Shown here piece after piece: positions 18,798 through 64,000 of a DNA stretch of 64,000 nt. The stretch spans positions 10,292,001 through 10,356,000 of the forward strand of contig OZ038378.1 in assembly GCA_964036045.1 (NCBI GenBank), in the 5' to 3' direction. Positions within the stretch are counted from its first letter, which is position 1. The number at the start of each line of letters is the position of its first letter. The DNA comes from Eutreptiella sp. 'Long Island Sound 2002'. Taxonomy: Eukaryota; Protista; Euglenida. Position numbers and translations under genes: made by a program. The notes beneath the pieces were generated by a model that saw nothing but the letters and a program-made list of their open reading frames with translations, was not told the origin of the DNA and searched no databases.

Positions 18798-19678
18798 TAC
18801 CCACCCAAACAGCCCACCCAAACAGCCCACCACCAGTCTTCCTGGGGTGTATTTCTGGTTGCCGATAATTCCCAAAGGCTTGTGGCTAGTTTTTGTTCTT
18901 TCCGGGGGCTCCTTGACGGTTGCAATGGTCACCAGGAGGGTCCCCAGATTGTCCCAAGGTTTGCAGCGCGCCCACACCGCACGCGCCCCGTGGCAAGAGC
19001 GCCCTCTTCGAGAGGGCCGTGCTGACGTGCGACCCACAGGCACGCGGTTCGGGGCGTGGGCCCCGCTGCAACACCGTTCAGGGGCAGTCACACCACAACA
19101 AACGGAAGTGGCGGGCGGTGCCAAGCGGACCGTTGTCTGAAGCTGAAACCACTCTTCACGACATGACGCACCCCCTCTCCTTCAGCACCACAAACATGTC
19201 GTCTCGCGTTCTTGACCGTCTGGGGGCCACATCCGTCAAAAAAGGGCTTTTACGACGCGTCGTACTACGACGCCTGTTACCACGTGTCGTGGATTACACG
19301 CGTCGTAATGACACTTTGCAGACCCTGGGAACATGTACGTTTACCAGAGTTTAGTCTGTAAACACTGTGCAGAGGTGCAGATGCCACGGCCACGGAAAGA
19401 CATTGATCAATGATGGGACCCGAGGCGGCCCCCTCAAAAAACAATGCATAGGTCTGGTTCTCCGTCGCAATACTACGCGTCGCAAGGCGTCGTAGTATTA
19501 CGCGTAACAGCTTTGCGACGCTTTCCGACTCGTCGTAACACGCCGCCTATTACGAGGCCCCGACGCGTTGTGCCGCGCTTGTTTGACAGACACCCCCGAA
19601 GGCGGCGGGGGTGCCCATTCCCTTTGTACTACGCGGACGGTCCCCCCCACACAAAGGGACCCCATCCACAGACGACAC

Positions 19679-20500
19679 CTGCGTCTGGAGGTTGAGGCTG
19701 TGGTACGGGATGCGGTAGGGGGTGTTGAACGCGGGGAGCAGCAGCTTGGCCAAGTCCTCGGCCTTCTGCAGGAACAGGGCGTCCCTGCTGAGGGTGTAGG
19801 CGGCGAGCAGGCCCCCCATGTGGCGGATGGTGGTCTCGAACACCGACACGGTGGTGTCCTTCCGGTACGAGAGGCGGCGGACGTGCTCGCGGGCCTCCCG
19901 CCACTCCGCCCGCAGCCCCATGATCCACAGCGTGTCCAGCGCGTCCACGACGGTGATCCCGAACCCGCCCCAACTGTCGTTGGTCCTGTTGCTGACCGGG
20001 CGCAGCTCGTCGTGACCCCAGGCGTAGGCCCGGTAGGACCGCCACGCGTGCCGGAACGCGTCCCGGACGGCGTCCCGGCGCTGCCGCATCACCGCGTCGG
20101 TCTCGGGGTCGGTGTCCCCGAGGGGGGGCAGCGGGACGGAGGCCTGGGCGCCGCGCATCAGCTCGTGGGGGGCTTGGCGGTCCAGCGGCCCCGCGCGCGA
20201 CGGGGGACGGGGCGTGCCCCCGGGCGGGGGGGCGCCTCGGAGGGGCACGGGCTGGTCCAGCGTGGCGCGCTCCTTGGCTTCGTGGCGCCGGGAGTGGAGC
20301 GTGGTCAGCTCGATGGCGATGACGCTCGAGGCCATCAGCATCCCACAGACGCACGTGATGGTGAGCCACCACGCGAAGCCGGCGTCCCGCACCCAGGCCA
20401 CGCGCTGCGCCAGGAAGTACTTCCGGAGGCGCTTTTTGGCCCGGTCCCGGGACGGCCCACTCACGTCATCGTCGTCGGGGATCCAGATGTTGGTTTCCAT
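19679..20500 (-). CDS. MNS1: Class I alpha-1,2-mannosidase (GH47), exon 1 of 3, with type II signal anchor
   Basis: METNIW start (ATG at 20500), hydrophobic AGFAWWLTITCVCGMLMASSVIAI, Pro-rich stem, then AFRHAWRSYRAYAWGHDELRPVS, TVVDALDTLWIMG, VSVFETTIRHMGGLL, LLPAFNTP. Donor CAG|GTGTCG. Spliced CDS is 1839 nt = 612 aa + stop. Confidence 0.95.
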
Positions 20501-21206
20501 GTTGAGGCTGCAATCACAGGTCAATGCATCGTAACCCCCCTCCCACGCCCCTGCGTGTGCACTGGCAGTGCCATGGGGATCTCCACCGTCGTTGCAGAAT
20601 GTGATTGGAGGCATAGGGGCTGTGGTGAGGTCGGCTTGTCGCAACCCCCACAACTCAGGAAACCATTTCAACAATTCGGGGCAACAAAGTGCGCACACTT
20701 CTGGGCTGTTTCCGGGCTGTTTCCTATGTTCATGGATTGTGTAAACTGAGTGTAATGTATACACAGCGAACAGTGAACAGTGTCGGCAATTCAGCAGCGC
20801 GTTGTGCAACTAAGGCTTGGACCAAAAGCATGAGACCCCTCGTAACACGCACGCAGGTCCATGGAGCTAAAAACCCTGTCCACGGAAGGAAAAATACACA
20901 TTCACACTGCGGAGACGGCTGTATTGGGTGGGTCCGGCACATCCAACAAATCGAGGCACACACTCGGCGCGAATCCGGGGACTCACCCCGGTTTGGGGGC
21001 GATTACCATAGGGAGCAATGCACTGCTGTGGTCGCCGGTGGTTGCCGGTGGTCGCCGAAACCGGTCGAATTTAAAAATGGCGCCCCTGGCGTTGTTAATT
21101 ATGGCATTTTTAGTTATGACCACCCATATGGACGCTGCACGGAGCACGCAAACGTCGCCACAGATTCAAAATGATGACCCCAGTAGTATGTTGAGGAACA
21201 CAGGTT

Positions 21207-52446: not shown

Positions 52447-52580
52447 CTGTATGTATATCGGCGGGTCGCAGGCCATGCGCGTACAGCACTGTAACCTTCA
52501 CCTCCGCAAAGAAAGAGGGGCGCAGACTCATATCAATGCCTACCAATCCTTTGGCCAAGTCAATAACCTTGGGAATCAGC
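52447..52580 (-). CDS. MCTP-like protein exon (start of C2 domain: AEVKVTVLYAHGLRPADIHTG)
   Basis: Acceptor TGCGTTTCAG|G (phase 2), donor ACAG|GTGTGG (phase 1), 134 nt. Joins in frame to GKADPY at 42811. Confidence 0.85.
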
Positions 52581-53292
52581 CTGAAACGCAAGACAAACAC
52601 CTCTGAGAAATGGACTGGGGACAGGTGGGTGGGTGCTGATTGGCACATCACAGCGGCGACGCTGTGTGCAGGTGAGTTGCTTAATGCAGTTGTCTGTGCC
52701 AACACACTACGTTGTACCACGGAGGAAAGCCCTTCGGTGCAAGCTGTGTGTTGCTGCAGCTTCGCGCGGCAGCTTCATGTGGCCACACATTATGCGATTA
52801 GCCGCTCCGTGCTCTCGTGTGTTGCTGCTTGGTGCTGAGGTGGCGTCTAACGTTGCCATTTGACGCAAAAAGATGCTTGCCTTTATTTGTTCGCGGGGCG
52901 TCTCAGCCCCCTGATGAGAATCTCAGGCACAGGAGCTTTGTTTCCTCATTTACTTTTGTCTTTAGGTTCTCAAGCAGCTATGCATACCAAGGAACCCACC
53001 TTTGTACATCGACTGGCGCAAGAGGACCGCATTTACGATGTGTGCCCGTCCGAAGCAGTGAGCCAGAGCACCCCGGGGGGGCGACTACCAACGGTCCTGA
53101 TGCGACCACCCCCCAGCTATCTGTCAAAACTGGGGGGGGGGGGGGGGCAGTTGGGGGGGGGTCCAGCCGGAGGTCGGGGGGGGGGGGGGTGTTCCTGCCG
53201 GGGGTCGGGGGGGGGGTGTTCCTGCCGGGGGTCGGGGGGGGGTCTGGCCGGGGGGTCAGGGGGGTGGCCAGCCAGGGGTGAGGGGGGGGGGG

Positions 53293-53322
53293 TTAGGGTT
53301 AGGGTTAAGGGTAGGGTTAGGG
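53293..53322 (+). repeat. Internal telomere-like tract (5 TTAGGG-type units) left of the element array
   Basis: TTAGGG TTAGGG TTAAGG GTAGGG TTAGGG. Confidence 0.9.
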
Positions 53323-54459
53323 TCACCGAGCTGGTGGAACCAGTCTTGGTTTTATAACCCTTTTTAGTGTCTAGGGTGGACCTACCAGGTTTAGCAAGCA
53401 AGCAGCAAGCAGCAAGCAGCAAGCAAGCAGCACGCGCGAAATGGGAAAAAATCAGAACTCTGTCGTGGTGCTTCAGATTCGGGTGAAATTTTGGTGGATG
53501 ATACCTATGGGTGTGAAGTACAATCACACAAAGTTTGAGCAAGAAACTCAACGGTGGCGGCCGGCAACGGGATTCGCAAGTGGCGGACCTCAGTTTCAAA
53601 AACTGCAGTTTAGGGCCAAAAACAGCCATTTTTGGGCTTAAAAAGCCCTGGAACACATTCAAAACAGCCAAACGAAGGGAAACGGTGGGTACACTCCATG
53701 TGCGGCTTGACTTCCCCATGTCAACGAGCTCTTTGCCGCCCTCTAACTCCATGATATGTCGTGGAAACGGCCCAAAAAGGCCCCCAAAAGCTCCAAATGC
53801 CGACAGCCACAAACCAAGAATAGGCCATATCTTTGGCTACATGGCTCAAAATGCGATTCCGAGGGCACCTATTCCACCCGCAACCCCCCACTTTTTGTGG
53901 TTTCCACCCCTCAGAATTGCCCAAATGGACGTCTAGACCCCCATACCTAGGCCCACTAGGTTGCGGCAAGCTGCGAGCTCAAGCCCAAACAGGTGGGTGC
54001 CCAAATGGGTCAACAGGGTCCAGTAGGGGCAAAAAGATGACTTTTCTCAAAAATGATCCTCGACCATGTGCGACGCTAAAACAAGAGTTTTTGGACCGTT
54101 TTGAGCTTGTGGTGGCCCATTTGGGTCCTCCGCCAATCCCAAAATGCCTTGAAACTGGGCTGTTTTGGGACCAAAAATGGGTCAAAAATGGGTCAAAAAT
54201 GCATTTTTCCAAACCTCATCCTAGACCATTTGGGGTGCACAAACGGGTGAAATGAGCCCATTTTGAGCCCATTTTGGGGTATTTTGGCCCCTCAGAAGTC
54301 CAAAAAGCCTTGAAAGTGGGCCTCGTGGTGATGGGGTTCACTTGCTAGCCGATTCCACTTTGTCAAGAGCCATCAATGTGTGAATCATTCTTGATGTCCC
54401 TCACCAGTCATAGCTGATGTTCCCTCCCCCACCAGCTCGGTCCCAATGTTCAGTCTTGA
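53323..54459 (+). mobile_element. TTAGGG-flanked non-coding element, copy 1 (1137 bp)
   Basis: TTAGGG|TCA...TGA|TTAGGG. Perfect 13-bp asymmetric sub-terminal inverted repeat ACCGAGCTGGTGG (53325..53337) / CCACCAGCTCGGT (54429..54441). (AGCA) microsatellite about 70 bp from the left end. Confidence 0.88.
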
Positions 54460-54465
54460 TTAGGG

Positions 54466-55614
54466 TCACGGAGCTGGTGGAACCAGTCTTGGTTTTATAA
54501 CCCTTTTTAGTGTCTAGGGTGGACCTACCAGGTTTAGCAGCAGCAAGCAGCAGCAAGCAGCAGCAAGCAGCAGCACGCGCGAAATGGGGAAAAATCAGAA
54601 TTCCGTCGTGGTGCTTTGGATTCGGCTGAAATTTTGGTGGATGATACCTATGGGTGTGAGGGACAACCCTACAAAGTATGAGCCAGAAACTCAACGGTGG
54701 CGGCCGTGAACAGCTGTCGCAAGTGGCGGACCTCAGCATCAAAAACTGCAGTTTAGGGCCAAAACAGCCATTTTTGGACCAAAAAAGCCCTAGAACCCAT
54801 TCAAAACGGCCAAACAAAGGGAAACGGTGGGTACACTCCACGTGCGGCTTGACTTTCCTGTGTCAACGAGCCCTTTGCGGCCCTCTAACTCCACCATATG
54901 TCCTTGAAACGGCCCAAAAAGACCCCAGAAGCCCCAAATTTTGTGCAGATTGGCTGGCGAGAGCCACAAACCAAGAACAGGCCATATCTTTGGCTACATG
55001 GTCCAAAACGCGATTCCGAGGGCACCTACTCCACCCGCAACCCCCCACTTTTTGTGGTTTCCACCCCTCAGAATTGCCCAAACAAACGCCTAGACCCCCA
55101 TACATAGCCCCAGCAGGCTGCGGCAAGCTGCAAGCTCAAGCCCAAACAGGTGGGTGCCCAAATGGGTCAACAGGGTCCAGTAGGGGCAAAAAAATGACTT
55201 TTTTCAAAAATGATCCTACACCATGTGTGATGCTAAAACAAGTGTTTTTGGACCGTTTTGAGCTTGTGGTGGCCCATTCTGGTCCTCCGAAAATCCCAAA
55301 ATGCCTTGACAATGGGCTGTTTGGGGACCAAAAATGGGTCAAAAATGGGTCAAAAACACATTTTTCCAAAACTCATCCTAGACCATTTGGGGTGCCCAAG
55401 CGGGTGAAATGAGCCCATTTTGAGCCCATTTTGGGGGATTTTGGCCCCTCAGAAATCCAAAAAAGCCTTGAAAGTGGCCCTTGTGGTGATGGGAATCACT
55501 TGCAAGCTGATTCCACTCTATCAACGGCCTTCAATGTGTGACTCATTGGTGTTTCTCACCATTCATAGCTGATGTTCCCTCCCCCACCAGCTCGGTCCCA
55601 ATGTTCAGTCTTGA
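54466..55614 (+). mobile_element. TTAGGG-flanked element, copy 2 (1149 bp, divergent subfamily)
   Basis: Separated from copies 1 and 3 by a single TTAGGG on each side (54460..54465, 55615..55620). Carries an insertion (TTTTGTGCAGATTGGCTGGCGAG region) absent from copies 1 and 3. Confidence 0.88.
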
Positions 55615-55620
55615 TTAGGG

Positions 55621-57149
55621 TAACGGAGCTGCTGGAACCAGTCTTGGTTTTATAACCCTTTTTAGTGTCTAGGGTGGACCTACCAGGTTTAGCAGCAGCA
55701 AGCAGCAGCAAGCAGCAAGCAGCACGCGCGAAATGGGCCAAAATCAGAACTCCGTCGTGGTGCTTTGGATTTGAGTGAAATTTTGGTGGATGATACCTAT
55801 GGGTGTGAAGTACAATCACACAAAGTTTGAGCAGGAAACTTGACAGTGGTGGCCGGGAACGGGATTCGCAAGTGGCGGACCTCAGTTTCAAAAACTGCAG
55901 TTTAGGGCCAAAACAGCCATTTTTCGGCCAAAAAAGCCCTAAAACCCATTCAAAACGGCCAAACGAAGGGAAACGGTGGGTACACTCCATGTGCGGCTTG
56001 ACTTCCCCGTGTCAACGAGCTCTTTGCCGCCCTCTAACTCCATGATATGTCCTTGAAACGGCCCAAAAAGGCCCCCAGAAGCTCCCAATGCCGACAACCA
56101 CAAACCAAGAATAGGCCATATCTTTGGCTACATCGCTCAAAATGCGATTCCGAGGGCACCTATTCCACCCGCAACCCCCCACTTTTTGTGGTTTCCACCC
56201 CTCAGAATTGCCCAAAGGGACGCCTAGACCCCAATGCCTAGGCCCACTAGGCTGCGGCAAGGTGCAAGCTGAAGCCCAAACAGGTGGGTGCCCAAATGGG
56301 TCAACAGGGTCCAGTAGGGGCAAAAAGATGACTTTTCTCAAAAATGATCCTATACCATGTGCCAAGGTAAAACGAGTGTTTTTGGACCGTTTTGAGCTTG
56401 TGGTGGCCCATTTTGGTACTCCGAAAATCCCAAAATGCCTTGAAACTGGGCTGTTTTGGGACCAAAAATGGGTCAAAAATGGGTCAAAAACGCATTTTTC
56501 CAAACCTCATCCTAGACCATTTGGGGTGCACAAACGGGTGAAATGAGCCCATTTTGAGCCCATTTTGGGGGCATTTTGGCCCCTCAGAAGTCCAAAAAGC
56601 CTTGAAAGTGGGCCTCGTGGCACCCCGTAATGCGTGAAACAAGGAACATGCAACACTTGACAGGCACACAATAGCCGGATAGAGACATCAATTTTTTGGT
56701 ACAGGTATGTGGCAGGAAGTACAATGCATTGTACATATGCATCGATTTGCTCATAACAAGAGAAAGAGGAACGGGATCGCGGTGAAGCGAAAGCCGAGCG
56801 CAGACGTCAACACGAAGCTTGGGGAGCACATTCATTCCGAGTGGAGGGGAATACAGAACAGACAGTGCAATTCGTGCAATAATGGGATCGCGGTGAAGCG
56901 AAAGCCATTTGCAAACTCAAAAGGAGGGAGGGGAAAACCAAACATGCAGTGACATTCATGCAATAATGGCATCACGATGAAGCGAAAACCAGTTGCCAAT
57001 GCAAAATGAGGGGAGAGGAATACGAAACACACAACAACATGCATGCAACCCTCAATCGCCATCCCCCAACCAATTGACTTTCCTCCACCCTAGTACGCAC
57101 AGAAGCATAGGCACTACCCCACCAGCTCGGTCCCAATATTCAGTCTTGA
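55621..57149 (+). mobile_element. TTAGGG-flanked element, copy 3, with ~500 bp of foreign sequence (56621..~57116) replacing ~95 bp before the conserved right end
   Basis: Colinear with copy 1 up to GGGCCTCGTGG at 56620. The right end CCACCAGCTCGGTCCCAATATTCAGTCTTGA resumes at ~57119. Confidence 0.85.
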
Positions 57150-57194
57150 TTAGGGTTAGGGGTTAGGGGTTAGGGGTTAGGGTTAGGGCTAGGG
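57150..57194 (+). repeat. Internal telomere-like tract (TTAGGG/TTAGGGG, 7 units) right of the array
   Basis: TTAGGG TTAGGGG TTAGGGG TTAGGGG TTAGGG TTAGGG CTAGGG. Confidence 0.92.
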
Positions 57195-58275
57195 TTGCTG
57201 TTAAGGCTTGCAGCCCTCCTGTAGCCCTCCTTCATCTCAAAAATTTTTCTTGTTGTTTTAACACAAATATGAATTATCTACAAATTTTTGAGTATTTTGA
57301 GTATAAACACATAGTATGAAAAAAAAAATTGGCGCCTTTGGCGCCGAACAGTTTTCTCTAGGGACACTTGTTGAGGGCCGACCCGGCACCACTATCTTTC
57401 AAAACCCCGGGGGGGGGGGGGGGCTGGGGAGGGTCGCATACAAGGACCCGGCCCGGCTGCCCCCCCGGGGAGAGCACATTGAATTTGAGACAGCTGTAAT
57501 TTGAGACGGCACCACTCCAAGGACGGTGTCCCTTGCCTTGCTTTTGTATCCCCCGTGTGGGGGACGTGAAGGCGGCCCCGCCCCCTTTGACCACCAACGC
57601 GTCCTATAGAATTCCTCCGACGCCTTCAGGTGACCCGGTGGTGCCTTGGATGCCAGTCAATTGAGACCAAACCCTCTCGTCCGCCCCTGGAACACCCCCT
57701 GAACAAGATTGCCTCTCATCTCTACAGCACGGCGCCCATGGCCTTTGCGCTTTGTCCCAAGACTGAGTTTAGCTGAAGAAGCAGGGTAGAAGTGGAATGT
57801 TTACTGTTAAAGCACAAGACATCTGAGCAATAGGCCGCAAGTTGGAGGCCGAGGGGGTCCATTTGCTCGATTTACGGGCATCGGTGCAATTCCCATGAAA
57901 CTCAAGTGCACTCAAATGCGAGGCGATGAAACAAAAAATCCCCCAAGGCCGAGGAAGATGAGGATCTGTTTTTACAGGCGCCTTTGGCGCCAAGGCTGAG
58001 TCCACCTTTTCCGGCTCTTTAGAATGTCTATTCCATCGGAGGGAATCCGCAGGTCTACTTCTCAAAATGGCTGACAGCCCGAAAATCGTGAAGATCTCGT
58101 CTGCTTGGACTTTCTTGGACTTTGGTACTTTCTCCATCTTACCTCTTATTACCACATCACTCTCAAAAGAAATGTACAAATTATGGTCCCAATGGGGACG
58201 GGGGTGCACTCGCCATGAAGGTCCGGCTGCCACGCACCAACGCACTTGCATGCTGACCCTTCACAACACGCATAC

Positions 58276-63730: not shown

Positions 63731-63743
63731 CCCCTATCCCTAA

Positions 63744-64000
63744 TCAAGACTCAATATTGGGACCGAGCTGGTGGGGGAGGGAACATCAGCTATGACTGGT
63801 GAGGGACATCAAGAATGTTTCAAACATTGATGGCTCTTGACAGAGTGAAATCACCTTGCAAGTGAACCCCATTGCCACGAGGCCCACTTTCAAGGCTTTT
63901 TGGACTTCTCAAGGGCCAAAATGGCCCAAAATGGGCTCAAAATGCGCTCATTGCACCCGTTTGTGCACCCCAAATGGTCTAGGATGAGGTCTGGGAAAAT
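63744..64000 (-). mobile_element. TTAGGG-flanked element, copy 4 (inverted; right end only, runs off the window)
   Basis: CCCCTAT CCCTAA|TCAAGACTCAATATTGGGACCGAGCTGGTGGGGGAGGGAACATCAGCTATGA... is the reverse complement of the right ~250 bp of copy 1. Confidence 0.9.

What the first reader, a model, noticed from the sequence alone, without database searches (positions are those of the whole stretch)
53293..57194. Telomere-repeat-targeting mobile element family: ~1.14-kb units inserted at GGG^TTA, stacked head-to-tail inside an intron
Seen in the sequence: three units sit within an interstitial TTAGGG tract, each junction is TTAGGG|T(C/A)A...TGA|TTAGGG, and neighbours are separated by exactly one TTAGGG. 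Each unit has a 13-bp asymmetric sub-TIR (2 nt from the left end, 18 nt from the right), a small hairpin CTGGT-GGA-ACCAG overlapping the left sub-TIR, CAGTCTTG near both ends, an (AGCA) microsatellite, and no credible ORF. Established: Leishmania TATE elements (tyrosine-recombinase retroelements) insert at GGG^TTA in telomeric hexamers in tandem clusters, while asymmetric sub-TIRs plus a microsatellite are typical of non-autonomous Helentrons (DINE-1/HINE). Inference: this is a non-autonomous, site-specific element mobilised by a TATE-like recombinase or a rolling-circle transposase, using internal telomeric repeats as safe harbours. I know of no description of such a short family.
Basis: partly seen in the sequence, partly recalled or inferred. 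Interest (0 to 1): 0.9.

Follow-up and report, generated by a model that had tools for sequence, protein, structure and literature searches.

The report
Telomere-repeat-targeting non-autonomous Helitron family
A euglenid alga carries about 7,000 copies of a 1.1-kb non-coding jumping element that always lands, in one orientation and without a scar, between GGG and TTA of telomere-type repeats; its core is homologous to part of rolling-circle (Helitron) transposons of the same genome, so it is an unusual target-specific variant of a known transposon class.

Summary
Window 53323-57149 holds three head-to-tail units of 1137, 1149 and 1529 bp, each joined as TTAGGG|TCACC...TCTTGA|TTAGGG. The asymmetric 13-bp sub-terminal inverted repeat, the 5' hairpin and the AGCA microsatellite are all present, and there is no coding signal.

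Genome-wide there are 6,840 exact 3' ends, and 76% are followed by an exact TTAGGG. Filled and empty paralogous sites differ by a precise insertion with no duplication. The three units are independent insertions of different ages.

The host tracts are short telomere-like runs carried inside TIR MITEs. I found no gene evidence for an intron.

The 800-bp core is 75-77% identical to the 5' region of autonomous RepHel-J-domain Helitrons of this genome. Those Helitrons and their ORF-less derivatives have the same architecture but target (TA)n. There is no deficit of 5' ends, no ribozyme and no tail, which argues against retrotransposition.

Best reading: a non-autonomous Helitron2-like rolling-circle element specific for TTAGGG. 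Its own autonomous partner was not found. The TATE-like reading is not supported.

Helitrons that insert into telomeric repeats were published for Paramecium in 2026. This scan had already followed up the same family on other DNA (s1-216477). Verdict: a new variant of a known kind.

The parts
53065..53070 (.). Left copy of the 6-bp target duplication (AGAGCA) of the carrier MITE
53071..53322 (+). Left arm of the carrier MITE: the TIR (starts CCCCGGGGGGGC), G-rich 27-bp repeats, and a degenerate telomere-like tract at 53290-53322
   Evidence: related carrier families
53323..54459 (+). Unit 1 (1137 bp), the youngest: 97.9% identical to copies on other chromosomes
53325..53337 (+). 5' sub-terminal inverted repeat (13 bp), 2 nt from the end
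   Evidence: I7
53331..53343 (+). Small hairpin CTGGT-GGA-ACCAG, nested in the 5' sub-TIR as in the DINE-1 'IR'
   Evidence: PMC4067079
53355..53377 (+). Second conserved 5' hairpin. TAACCCT (the complement of the target AGGG^TTA) pairs with a TAGGGT copy. Invariant in 58 copies. This is a lead only.
53393..53432 (+). AGCA-type microsatellite
53531..54322 (+). Core, 75-77% identical to the 5' region of autonomous RepHel-J-domain Helitrons and to their (TA)n-targeting derivatives. It contains 11-bp direct and inverted repeats.
54429..54441 (+). 3' sub-terminal inverted repeat, followed by an 18-nt tail (54442-54459)
54460..54465 (+). Single TTAGGG spacer
54466..55614 (+). Unit 2 (1149 bp), the oldest: 89-90% identical to its neighbours, best match elsewhere 93.4%
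55615..55620 (+). Single TTAGGG spacer
55621..57149 (+). Unit 3 (1529 bp), the long variant. Its first ~1000 bp and last ~45 bp match the family. 56621-57105 is a variant-specific 3' region with tandem repeats.
57150..57196 (+). Right telomere-like tract of the carrier.
57197..57470 (+). Right arm and TIR of the carrier MITE. The second copy of the target duplication lies at 57471-57476.
63738..64000 (-). Fourth copy, inverted and cut by the window end (unit positions 881-1143, 93% identical). It abuts two degenerate C-strand telomere-type units.

Best explanation
This is a non-autonomous rolling-circle (Helitron2-like, HUH-transposase-dependent) transposon family. It integrates as single-stranded DNA, in one orientation and without target duplication, between GGG and TTA (equally readable as between the two T's) of YTAGGG-TTAGGG.

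Shown:
- the family, its termini and its copy number;
- the target and the fixed orientation;
- precise filled and empty sites;
- independent stacking of the three units in the window;
- homology of the core to the 5' region of autonomous RepHel Helitrons;
- a sister family with the same design that targets (TA)n and shares its ends with those autonomous elements.

Inferred:
- A RepHel protein nicks the element near its sub-terminal inverted repeats and peels off one strand. The joined 3'-5' ends fold into a strong hairpin. The protein then strand-transfers the element into the G-strand of a telomere-type repeat.
- Thousands of short telomere-like tracts spread by TIR MITEs serve as landing pads. 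This is why a telomere-repeat specialist reached about 7,000 interstitial copies and stacks head-to-tail.
- The long variant (unit 3) looks like an ORF-deleted derivative that kept the 3' tandem repeats.

The family's own autonomous partner was not identified.
For: Family and target:
- Genome-wide there are 6,840 exact 3' ends and 7,892 exact 5' ends; 76% of the 3' ends are followed by an exact TTAGGG.
- All 60 sampled loci show the same junction and the same orientation.
- Carrier-A MITE copies are empty in 8 of 30 cases. In filled copies the element lies after the 0th to 3rd repeat of the tract, with no bases gained or lost.
- u1, u2 and u3 are each closer to copies elsewhere than to each other.

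Architecture matches DINE-1/HINE/Helitron2:
- a 13-bp sub-TIR 2 nt from the 5' end, an inverted repeat nested in it, a microsatellite, and no TSD (PMC4067079; PMC13085455).

Link to Helitrons:
- Unit positions 209-1000 are 75-77% identical to repeats that flank a 2,631-aa ORF carrying Helitron_like_N, PIF1, SAP and DnaJ domains.
- The junction from that core into the unique sequence upstream of the ORF is 98-99% conserved over its full length in at least 16 copies, several of them next to other RepHel genes.
- In four loci of a related euglenid assembly and in this genome, these Helitrons end as (TA)n|TACTACACCCC...GGGAGAGGGGTGTAGATTRGAGGA|(TA)n. These are the same ends as an abundant ORF-less family with the same layout.
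- That sister family has 5,608 exact 5' ends, 83% of them preceded by ATATAT.

Other points:
- The junction 3' end-TTAGGG-5' end folds at -21.8 kcal/mol, z = -4.75.
- The first 60 nt are the most conserved part of the element.
- Many RepHel ORFs in the genome are intact.
Against: - No autonomous element with the TCACCGAGCTGG... and ...CAGTCTTGA termini was found. All RepHel-J-domain Helitrons sampled, down to 55% amino-acid identity with each other, carry the (TA)n-type ends.
- The termini of the two families share no sequence, so trans-mobilisation by the sampled Helitrons is unproven.
- The core could have been captured by an unrelated element.
- No clear 3' stem-loop lies between the 3' sub-TIR and the end.
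- The sampled RepHel lacks the AP endonuclease that defines Helentrons.
Confidence: 0.72

Rival explanations
1. A chimeric non-autonomous element whose termini belong to some other, unsampled transposase system. That system could be another Helitron group of this genome (for example the groups with 1,484-aa or 1,924-aa RepHel ORFs, or one fused to a nuclease) or another HUH element. On this reading the Helitron-like core is only captured cargo.
For: The termini have no similarity to the (TA)n-type Helitron ends, while the core is 76% identical. RepHel subfamilies that have diverged to 55-64% amino-acid identity still keep the TA-type ends, so the new ends look acquired rather than diverged. 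The genome has at least three RepHel groups and 863 first-look candidates.
Against: The two other RepHel loci inspected (20 kb each) hold no matching sub-TIR or telomere-flanked ends. The overall layout (asymmetric sub-TIR, AGCA microsatellite, core) is the same as in the sister family. That fits divergence within one lineage as well as capture.
Confidence: 0.15
2. It is mobilised by a TATE-like or Crypton-like tyrosine recombinase. A circular intermediate recombines with the telomeric hexamer.
For: Leishmania TATE has the same target (GGG^TTA) and the same tandem clustering, and it is a euglenozoan relative (PMC6681497). The junction between units would match a circle junction.
Against: The element has no recombinase or RT coding remnant and no split direct repeats. 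Its core is homologous to Helitron sequence, not to a retroelement. Its asymmetric sub-TIR design is that of Helitron2/HINE elements. I did not run a search of this genome for tyrosine recombinases carrying these ends.
Confidence: 0.05
3. It is a SINE-like retroelement copied by a telomere-specific non-LTR or Penelope-like reverse transcriptase through target-primed reverse transcription.
For: Penelope-like elements are abundant in this genome according to earlier scan notes. They often form head-to-tail arrays and associate with telomeres or simple repeats.
Against: Exact 5' ends (7,892) are not rarer than exact 3' ends (6,840), so there is no 5'-truncation bias. There is no poly(A) or other tail, and no hammerhead or other Rfam match. 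Insertions are precise and TSD-free. The 5' end is the most conserved part.
Confidence: 0.04
4. It is not mobile in its own right. It is a local satellite or a passenger that spreads only with the carrier MITE.
For: About 70% of sampled carrier-A MITE copies contain at least one unit. Some long arrays have uniform spacing, for example nine 3' ends 1,161 bp apart on contig 1, which suggests secondary tandem amplification.
Against: The insertion point inside the carrier's tract varies from copy to copy, and empty carriers exist. At least four different carrier families and some unique sites are used. The neighbouring units in the window are less alike than copies on different chromosomes.
Confidence: 0.02

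Closest known systems
Telomeric-repeat-targeting Helitrons of Paramecium aurelia (PMC13085455, BMC Biol 2026)
   Same: Rolling-circle-type elements flanked on both sides by telomeric repeats of one polarity, with an absolute orientation bias. They carry internal satellites and have many ORF-less derivatives. The authors likewise argue that the repeats are the target, not part of the element.
   Different: In Paramecium the repeat is C4A2/C3A3, the elements are 10-kb-class copies at germline chromosome ends, and insertion is inferred on the C-rich strand. Here the repeat is TTAGGG and the element strand is collinear with the G-strand. The ~7,000 copies are 1.1-kb ORF-less units lying in interstitial, MITE-borne tracts. 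The autonomous partner is unknown, and occupancy of true telomeres was not tested.
DINE-1 / HINE non-autonomous Helentrons and Helitron2 (PMC4067079)
   Same: 13-bp asymmetric sub-terminal inverted repeats with the 5' one 2-4 nt from the end, a short inverted repeat nested in the 5' sub-TIR, a microsatellite and internal repeats, no TSD, a junction readable as T|T, and very high copy number.
   Different: The 3' sub-TIR is 18 nt from the end here, against about 38-60 nt in HINEs, and there is no clear 3' stem-loop. The target is a specific ~12-bp repeat rather than a bare TT. The related autonomous elements encode RepHel plus SAP and J-domain and have no AP endonuclease.
The (TA)n-targeting RepHel-J-domain Helitron lineage and its ORF-less derivatives in this same genome
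   Same: A homologous 800-bp core (75-77%), the same order of parts (sub-TIR, AGCA-type microsatellite, core, sub-TIR, short tail), simple-repeat targeting and thousands of copies.
   Different: The termini are unrelated in sequence and the target is (TA)n. Because that target is palindromic, copies sit in both orientations within one cluster. The TTAGGG family is strictly head-to-tail.
Leishmania TATE (tyrosine-recombinase retroelement; PMC6681497)
   Same: Insertion at the same phase of the telomeric hexamer (GGG^TTA), in tandem clusters, within Euglenozoa.
   Different: TATE is a multi-kb retroelement that encodes RT and a tyrosine recombinase. The element here is non-coding and related to Helitrons. 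The resemblance is convergent use of the same target.

Membership tests
Helitron2/Helentron-type non-autonomous element (HINE/DINE-1-like) | Asymmetric 12-15-bp sub-terminal inverted repeats, the 5' one 2-4 nt from the terminus | tested here: met
   13 bp, 100% complementary, 2 nt from the 5' end and 18 nt from the 3' end. Criterion taken from PMC4067079.
Helitron2/Helentron-type non-autonomous element (HINE/DINE-1-like) | Short inverted repeat or hairpin at the 5' end, nested in the sub-TIR | tested here: met
   CTGGT-GGA-ACCAG at 53331-53343. The 5' 70 nt fold at z = -2.64.
Helitron2/Helentron-type non-autonomous element (HINE/DINE-1-like) | Stem-loop between the 3' sub-TIR and the 3' end | tested here: not met
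   The 3' 80 nt fold no better than shuffles (z = -0.92 and +1.41). Only a 3-bp stem forms in the 18-nt tail.
Helitron2/Helentron-type non-autonomous element (HINE/DINE-1-like) | Orientation-specific insertion at T|T (or T|Y) with no target-site duplication | tested here: met
   Filled and empty carrier copies differ by the element alone. The junction can be read as GGGT|...|TAGGG. The alternative G|T register cannot be excluded, because one T is shared.
Helitron2/Helentron-type non-autonomous element (HINE/DINE-1-like) | Termini shared with an autonomous Rep-helicase element | tested here: inconclusive
Met for the sister (TA)n family. For this family only the core is shared.
Helentron sensu stricto | AP endonuclease domain fused to RepHel | tested here: not met
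   The related 2,631-aa RepHel has Helitron_like_N, PIF1, SAP and DnaJ domains and no Exo_endo_phos domain.
Canonical Helitron (HLE1) | 5'-TC ... CTRR-3' termini, a 3' hairpin, insertion between A and T | tested here: not met
   The element starts with TC in one register but ends ...CTTGA. The target is G|T or T|T, never A|T.
TATE / DIRS-like tyrosine-recombinase retroelement | Encodes RT/RNase H and a tyrosine recombinase (or is a deletion derivative sharing their ends); split direct terminal repeats | tested here: not met
   No ORF or codon signal. The only direct repeats between the ends are the 8-bp CAGTCTTG. Internal homology is to Helitron sequence. The genome was not searched for a tyrosine-recombinase partner.
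TATE / DIRS-like tyrosine-recombinase retroelement | Insertion at GGG^TTA of telomeric hexamers in tandem clusters | tested here: met
   criterion from PMC6681497. This shows that the element works alike at the target, not that it is a member.
Non-LTR / Penelope-like-dependent SINE | 3' tail or shared 3' end with an RT element, 5' truncations, hammerhead ribozyme (Penelope-like elements) | tested here: not met
   7,892 5' ends against 6,840 3' ends. No Rfam match at E <= 1. No tail.
Paramecium-type telomere-capping Helitrons | Located at chromosome ends, inserted in terminal telomeric repeats | not tested
   Contig ends could not be fetched. The first listed copy on contig 1 lies 590 kb from the contig start. 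All sites examined are interstitial.

The most novel reading that the evidence does not exclude
Target choice may be written in the element's DNA rather than in the protein. A conserved 5' hairpin pairs TAACCCT, the exact complement of the target across the insertion point (AGGG^TTA), with an internal TAGGGT copy. By analogy with the guide sequences of IS200/IS605 HUH transposons, this could base-pair with the single-stranded G-strand target. The two sister families, targeting TTAGGG and (TA)n, would then be natural retargeting variants of one rolling-circle machinery, and a eukaryotic HUH transposon could be reprogrammed by changing a few bases.
Probability: 0.1. Interest if true: 0.85.

Novelty: new variant of a known kind. 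Interest (0 to 1): 0.6.

Why it matters
Helitron-type elements are usually described as needing only an AT or TT dinucleotide. Here one lineage in a single genome has produced two very abundant families with precise, scar-free, orientation-specific integration into different simple repeats, TTAGGG and (TA)n.

That gives a comparative handle on how HUH rolling-circle transposases pick targets. It also shows that telomere-repeat targeting by Helitron-like elements is not confined to ciliates.

The finding documents a layered arrangement. MITEs scatter short telomere-like tracts through the chromosome arms, and a telomere-repeat specialist then fills about 70% of the sampled carrier-A copies and stacks into arrays that could seed satellites.

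It also shows that Euglenozoa have exploited the same GGG^TTA site by two unrelated mechanisms: TATE in Leishmania and a Helitron relative here.

Tried and rejected
- Rfam scan of 52500-58000 at E <= 1 found nothing.
- ORF and Pfam checks found no coding capacity in the units and no domains in 18 flanking ORFs; the only Pfam hit was a GH47 exon 33 kb away.
- The idea that the telomeric repeats belong to the element, or are added by telomerase, is rejected. Filled carriers carry in total the same 1-4 hexamers as empty ones, and the insertion point varies.
- The composite MITE-plus-unit passenger model is rejected.
- Search for the autonomous partner:
  - Two other RepHel groups (20-kb loci) have no matching ends.
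  - The 3' region of the long variant is not near any listed RepHel hit.
  - A 64%-identical RepHel from a metagenome contig has no close copy in this genome.
  - Diverged RepHel subfamilies from a related euglenid assembly all carry TA-type ends.
  - Three more distant RepHel representatives have no matching ends.
  - Pairing the listed 5' and 3' ends on the first 22 Mb of contig 1 by eye gave only 1.1-2.9-kb elements and a few orphan 5' ends.
There is therefore no read evidence on expression, splicing or polymorphism. The listed runs hold the right flank, but none is on record as RNA.
- The count of telomeric 7-mers in the unit (one, against about 0.8 expected) is not significant in itself.
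Full report
WHAT IS THERE

Reading window 52800-57700 and aligning the units shows three head-to-tail units:
- u1 at 53323-54459 (1137 bp)
- u2 at 54466-55614 (1149 bp)
- u3 at 55621-57149 (1529 bp)

Each junction reads TTAGGG|T(C/A)AC...TCTTGA|TTAGGG, with exactly one hexamer between neighbours. u3 is a long variant. Its first ~1000 bp and last ~45 bp match the family, but 56621-57105 is different sequence with 84-bp repeats.

The sub-terminal inverted repeat (53325-53337 and 54429-54441; 13 bp, 100% complementary) is asymmetric, 2 nt from the left end and 18 nt from the right end. A small hairpin (53331-53343) is nested in the left repeat. An AGCA-type microsatellite follows at 53393-53432.

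No ORF is conserved. Among 58 distinct copies the longest ORF changes strand and frame, and substitutions show no codon periodicity. Rfam finds nothing. A fourth copy, inverted and cut by the window end, lies at 63738-64000.

IS IT A FAMILY WITH A FIXED TARGET?

Yes. The window's genome is 2.28 Gb and belongs to a euglenid alga according to earlier scan notes. It gives 7,633 first-look candidates for the unit, with full-length copies 97-98% identical on many contigs.

Exact 24-nt patterns give the following counts:

| Pattern | Matches | Reversed-pattern control |
|---|---|---|
| 3' end | 6,840 | 0 |
| 5' end | 7,892 | 0 |
| 3' end followed by exact TTAGGG | 5,205 (76% of 3' ends) | 0 |

In 60 fetched loci every copy has the same junction and the same orientation relative to the G-strand. 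The left hexamer is TTAGGG in 41 of 68 junctions and CTAGGG in 16 of 68. The right hexamer is TTAGGG in 51 of 63.

Median pairwise identity of 58 copies is 95%, ranging up to 99%, and the first 60 nt are the most conserved part. A 76%-identical copy with the same ends and flanks shows that the family is also old.

WHERE THE TARGETS COME FROM

The flanks beyond the hexamers fall into a few repeat families. Carrier A is a TIR element of about 0.8 kb with poly-G tracts and an internal CTAGGG(TTAGGG)1-4 tract.

The window's array sits in a related MITE spanning 53071-57470. Its TIRs begin CCCCGGGGGGGC, and it is flanked by a 6-bp duplication, AGAGCA.

Of 30 carrier-A copies, 8 are empty and about 21 hold one or more units. 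In filled copies the unit lies after the 0th, 1st, 2nd or 3rd hexamer. Filled and empty copies differ by the unit alone, with no duplication, no loss and no added hexamers.

These are therefore independent, precise insertions into pre-existing tracts. The repeats do not travel with the element. A few insertions lie in short telomere-like runs in otherwise unique DNA.

The 'intron' setting is unsupported. No ORF around the array matches any Pfam family, and read evidence could not be obtained.

STACKING

u1 is 97.9% identical to copies on other chromosomes but only 89% and 94% identical to u2 and u3. The best match for u2 elsewhere is 93.4%.

The three units are thus successive insertions. The middle one is the oldest, and each later one landed one hexamer away from it. 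Elsewhere, long arrays with uniform spacing suggest additional local amplification; one example has nine 3' ends 1,161 bp apart.

WHAT MOVES IT

The genome holds at least 863 Helitron_like_N candidates, many with intact ORFs of 1,400-2,631 aa.

Around one of these (contig 13; 2,631 aa; Helitron_like_N, PIF1, SAP and DnaJ domains), unit positions 209-1000 match flanking ~1-kb repeats at 75-77% identity. Those repeats form a sister family with the same layout but different ends and a different target: (TA)n|TACTACACCCCTCTCCCC - (ACAAGCA)n - core - GGGAGAGGGGTGTAGATTGGAGGA|(TA)n.

Several results tie that sister family to the autonomous Helitrons:
- The junction from this core into the unique sequence upstream of the RepHel ORF is conserved at 98-99% over its full length in at least 16 copies. 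Some of these lie next to other RepHel genes, so the core is part of the autonomous element's 5' region.
- In a related euglenid assembly, RepHel-J-domain elements at 55-97% amino-acid identity start or end with exactly these TA-type termini abutting (TA)n.
- The sister family has 5,608 exact 5' ends, 83% of them preceded by ATATAT.
- It occurs in both orientations within a cluster, as expected for a palindromic target. The TTAGGG family is strictly head-to-tail.

The TTAGGG family is therefore a relative of a demonstrably Helitron-derived family. Its sub-TIR, nested inverted repeat, microsatellite design and TSD-free insertion match the published definition of DINE-1/HINE/Helitron2 elements (PMC4067079; summary in PMC13085455).

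The joined 3' end-hexamer-5' end, as it would exist in a circular or concatemeric single strand, folds into a strong hairpin (-21.8 kcal/mol, z = -4.75).

Retrotransposition is disfavoured. There is no deficit of 5' ends, no tail and no ribozyme.

Nothing supports a tyrosine-recombinase route except the target it shares with Leishmania TATE, which I confirmed in PMC6681497.

WHAT IS MISSING

No autonomous element with the TTAGGG-type termini was found. Every RepHel-J-domain subfamily sampled has TA-type ends. Two other RepHel groups and three distant representatives have no matching ends.

The long variant's 3' repeats are 99% identical at some 40 listed places (518 first-look candidates), but none lies near a listed RepHel hit.

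Because the ends differ completely while the core is shared, the ends may have been acquired from another system. That rival reading gets 0.15.

A LEAD, NOT A RESULT

Unit positions 33-39 (TAACCCT) are the exact complement of the target across the insertion point. They pair with a TAGGGT copy in a second 5' hairpin, and both are invariant in 58 copies.

One telomeric 7-mer per unit is about what chance gives (about 0.8 expected), so only its position and conservation are suggestive. No analogous motif is obvious in the (TA)n family.

COMPARISON AND NOVELTY

The closest published case is the Paramecium aurelia Helitrons. They insert strand-specifically into C4A2 telomeric repeats, carry satellites and leave many ORF-less derivatives (PMC13085455).

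Helitron associations with Drosophila biarmipes telomeres and with cnidarian subtelomeres are also cited in the literature (PMC11934779).

I found no paper that links Helitrons with Euglena beyond passing mentions.

This scan had already followed up the same family on other DNA. It concluded that the family is a telomere-repeat-targeting element sitting mostly in tracts carried by an older transposon (s1-216477). My tests agree with that and add:
- the Helitron link
- the (TA)n sister family
- the genome-wide counts
- the end-count argument against retrotransposition

Verdict: a real, abundant and recently active family, and a new variant of a known kind.

CONSTRAINT OBSERVED

That tract is reported by coordinates only.

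Noticed in passing
L063+L066 (contig 13, 10430000-10449999, minus strand); also L067, L069, L070, L071: Autonomous Helitrons encode one giant RepHel with SAP and DnaJ (J-) domains. They insert in (TA)n microsatellites and carry 364-bp tandem repeats and a repeated ~28-nt motif on both sides of the ORF. Their ORF-less derivatives number more than 5,600.
   Followed up: partly
window 53071-57470, and carrier-A loci L033, L038-L040, L042, L045, L047: A group of TIR MITEs (TIR starts CCCCGGGGGGGC; 6-bp target duplication in the window copy) carries long poly-G runs, a short C-strand telomere-like stretch and a G-strand telomere-like tract. These MITEs are the main source of interstitial telomere-type repeats in this genome.
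   Followed up: partly
window 56621-57105 and about 40 listed places in the genome: The long variant's 3' region consists of tandem repeats with a ~446-bp period and variable copy number. The terminal 266 bp are 99% identical at about 40 listed places (518 first-look candidates), which makes this the youngest layer of the family.
   Followed up: partly
contig 1, 22173955-22183265 and 14124759-14133033 (coordinates): Arrays of nine or more units have uniform spacing (1,161 bp; 1,177-1,181 bp). This suggests satellite-like amplification of a unit plus a fixed number of hexamers, on top of independent insertions.
   Followed up: no
window 53153-53291 and 57400-57425: Poly-G runs of 10-17 bases and 24-27-bp G-rich tandem repeats occur inside the carrier. 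They could form G-quadruplexes next to the telomere-like tract.
   Followed up: no
L070 1-4070 and L071 1-2199: A large RVT_1-containing ORF (more than 1,759 aa) lies directly upstream of Helitron copies in the related euglenid assembly. It is probably a nested retroelement.
   Followed up: no
window 19550-20809 (-): An exon encoding a glycosyl hydrolase family 47 (mannosidase) domain. It was the only Pfam-supported coding sequence among the 18 ORFs I scanned.
   Followed up: no
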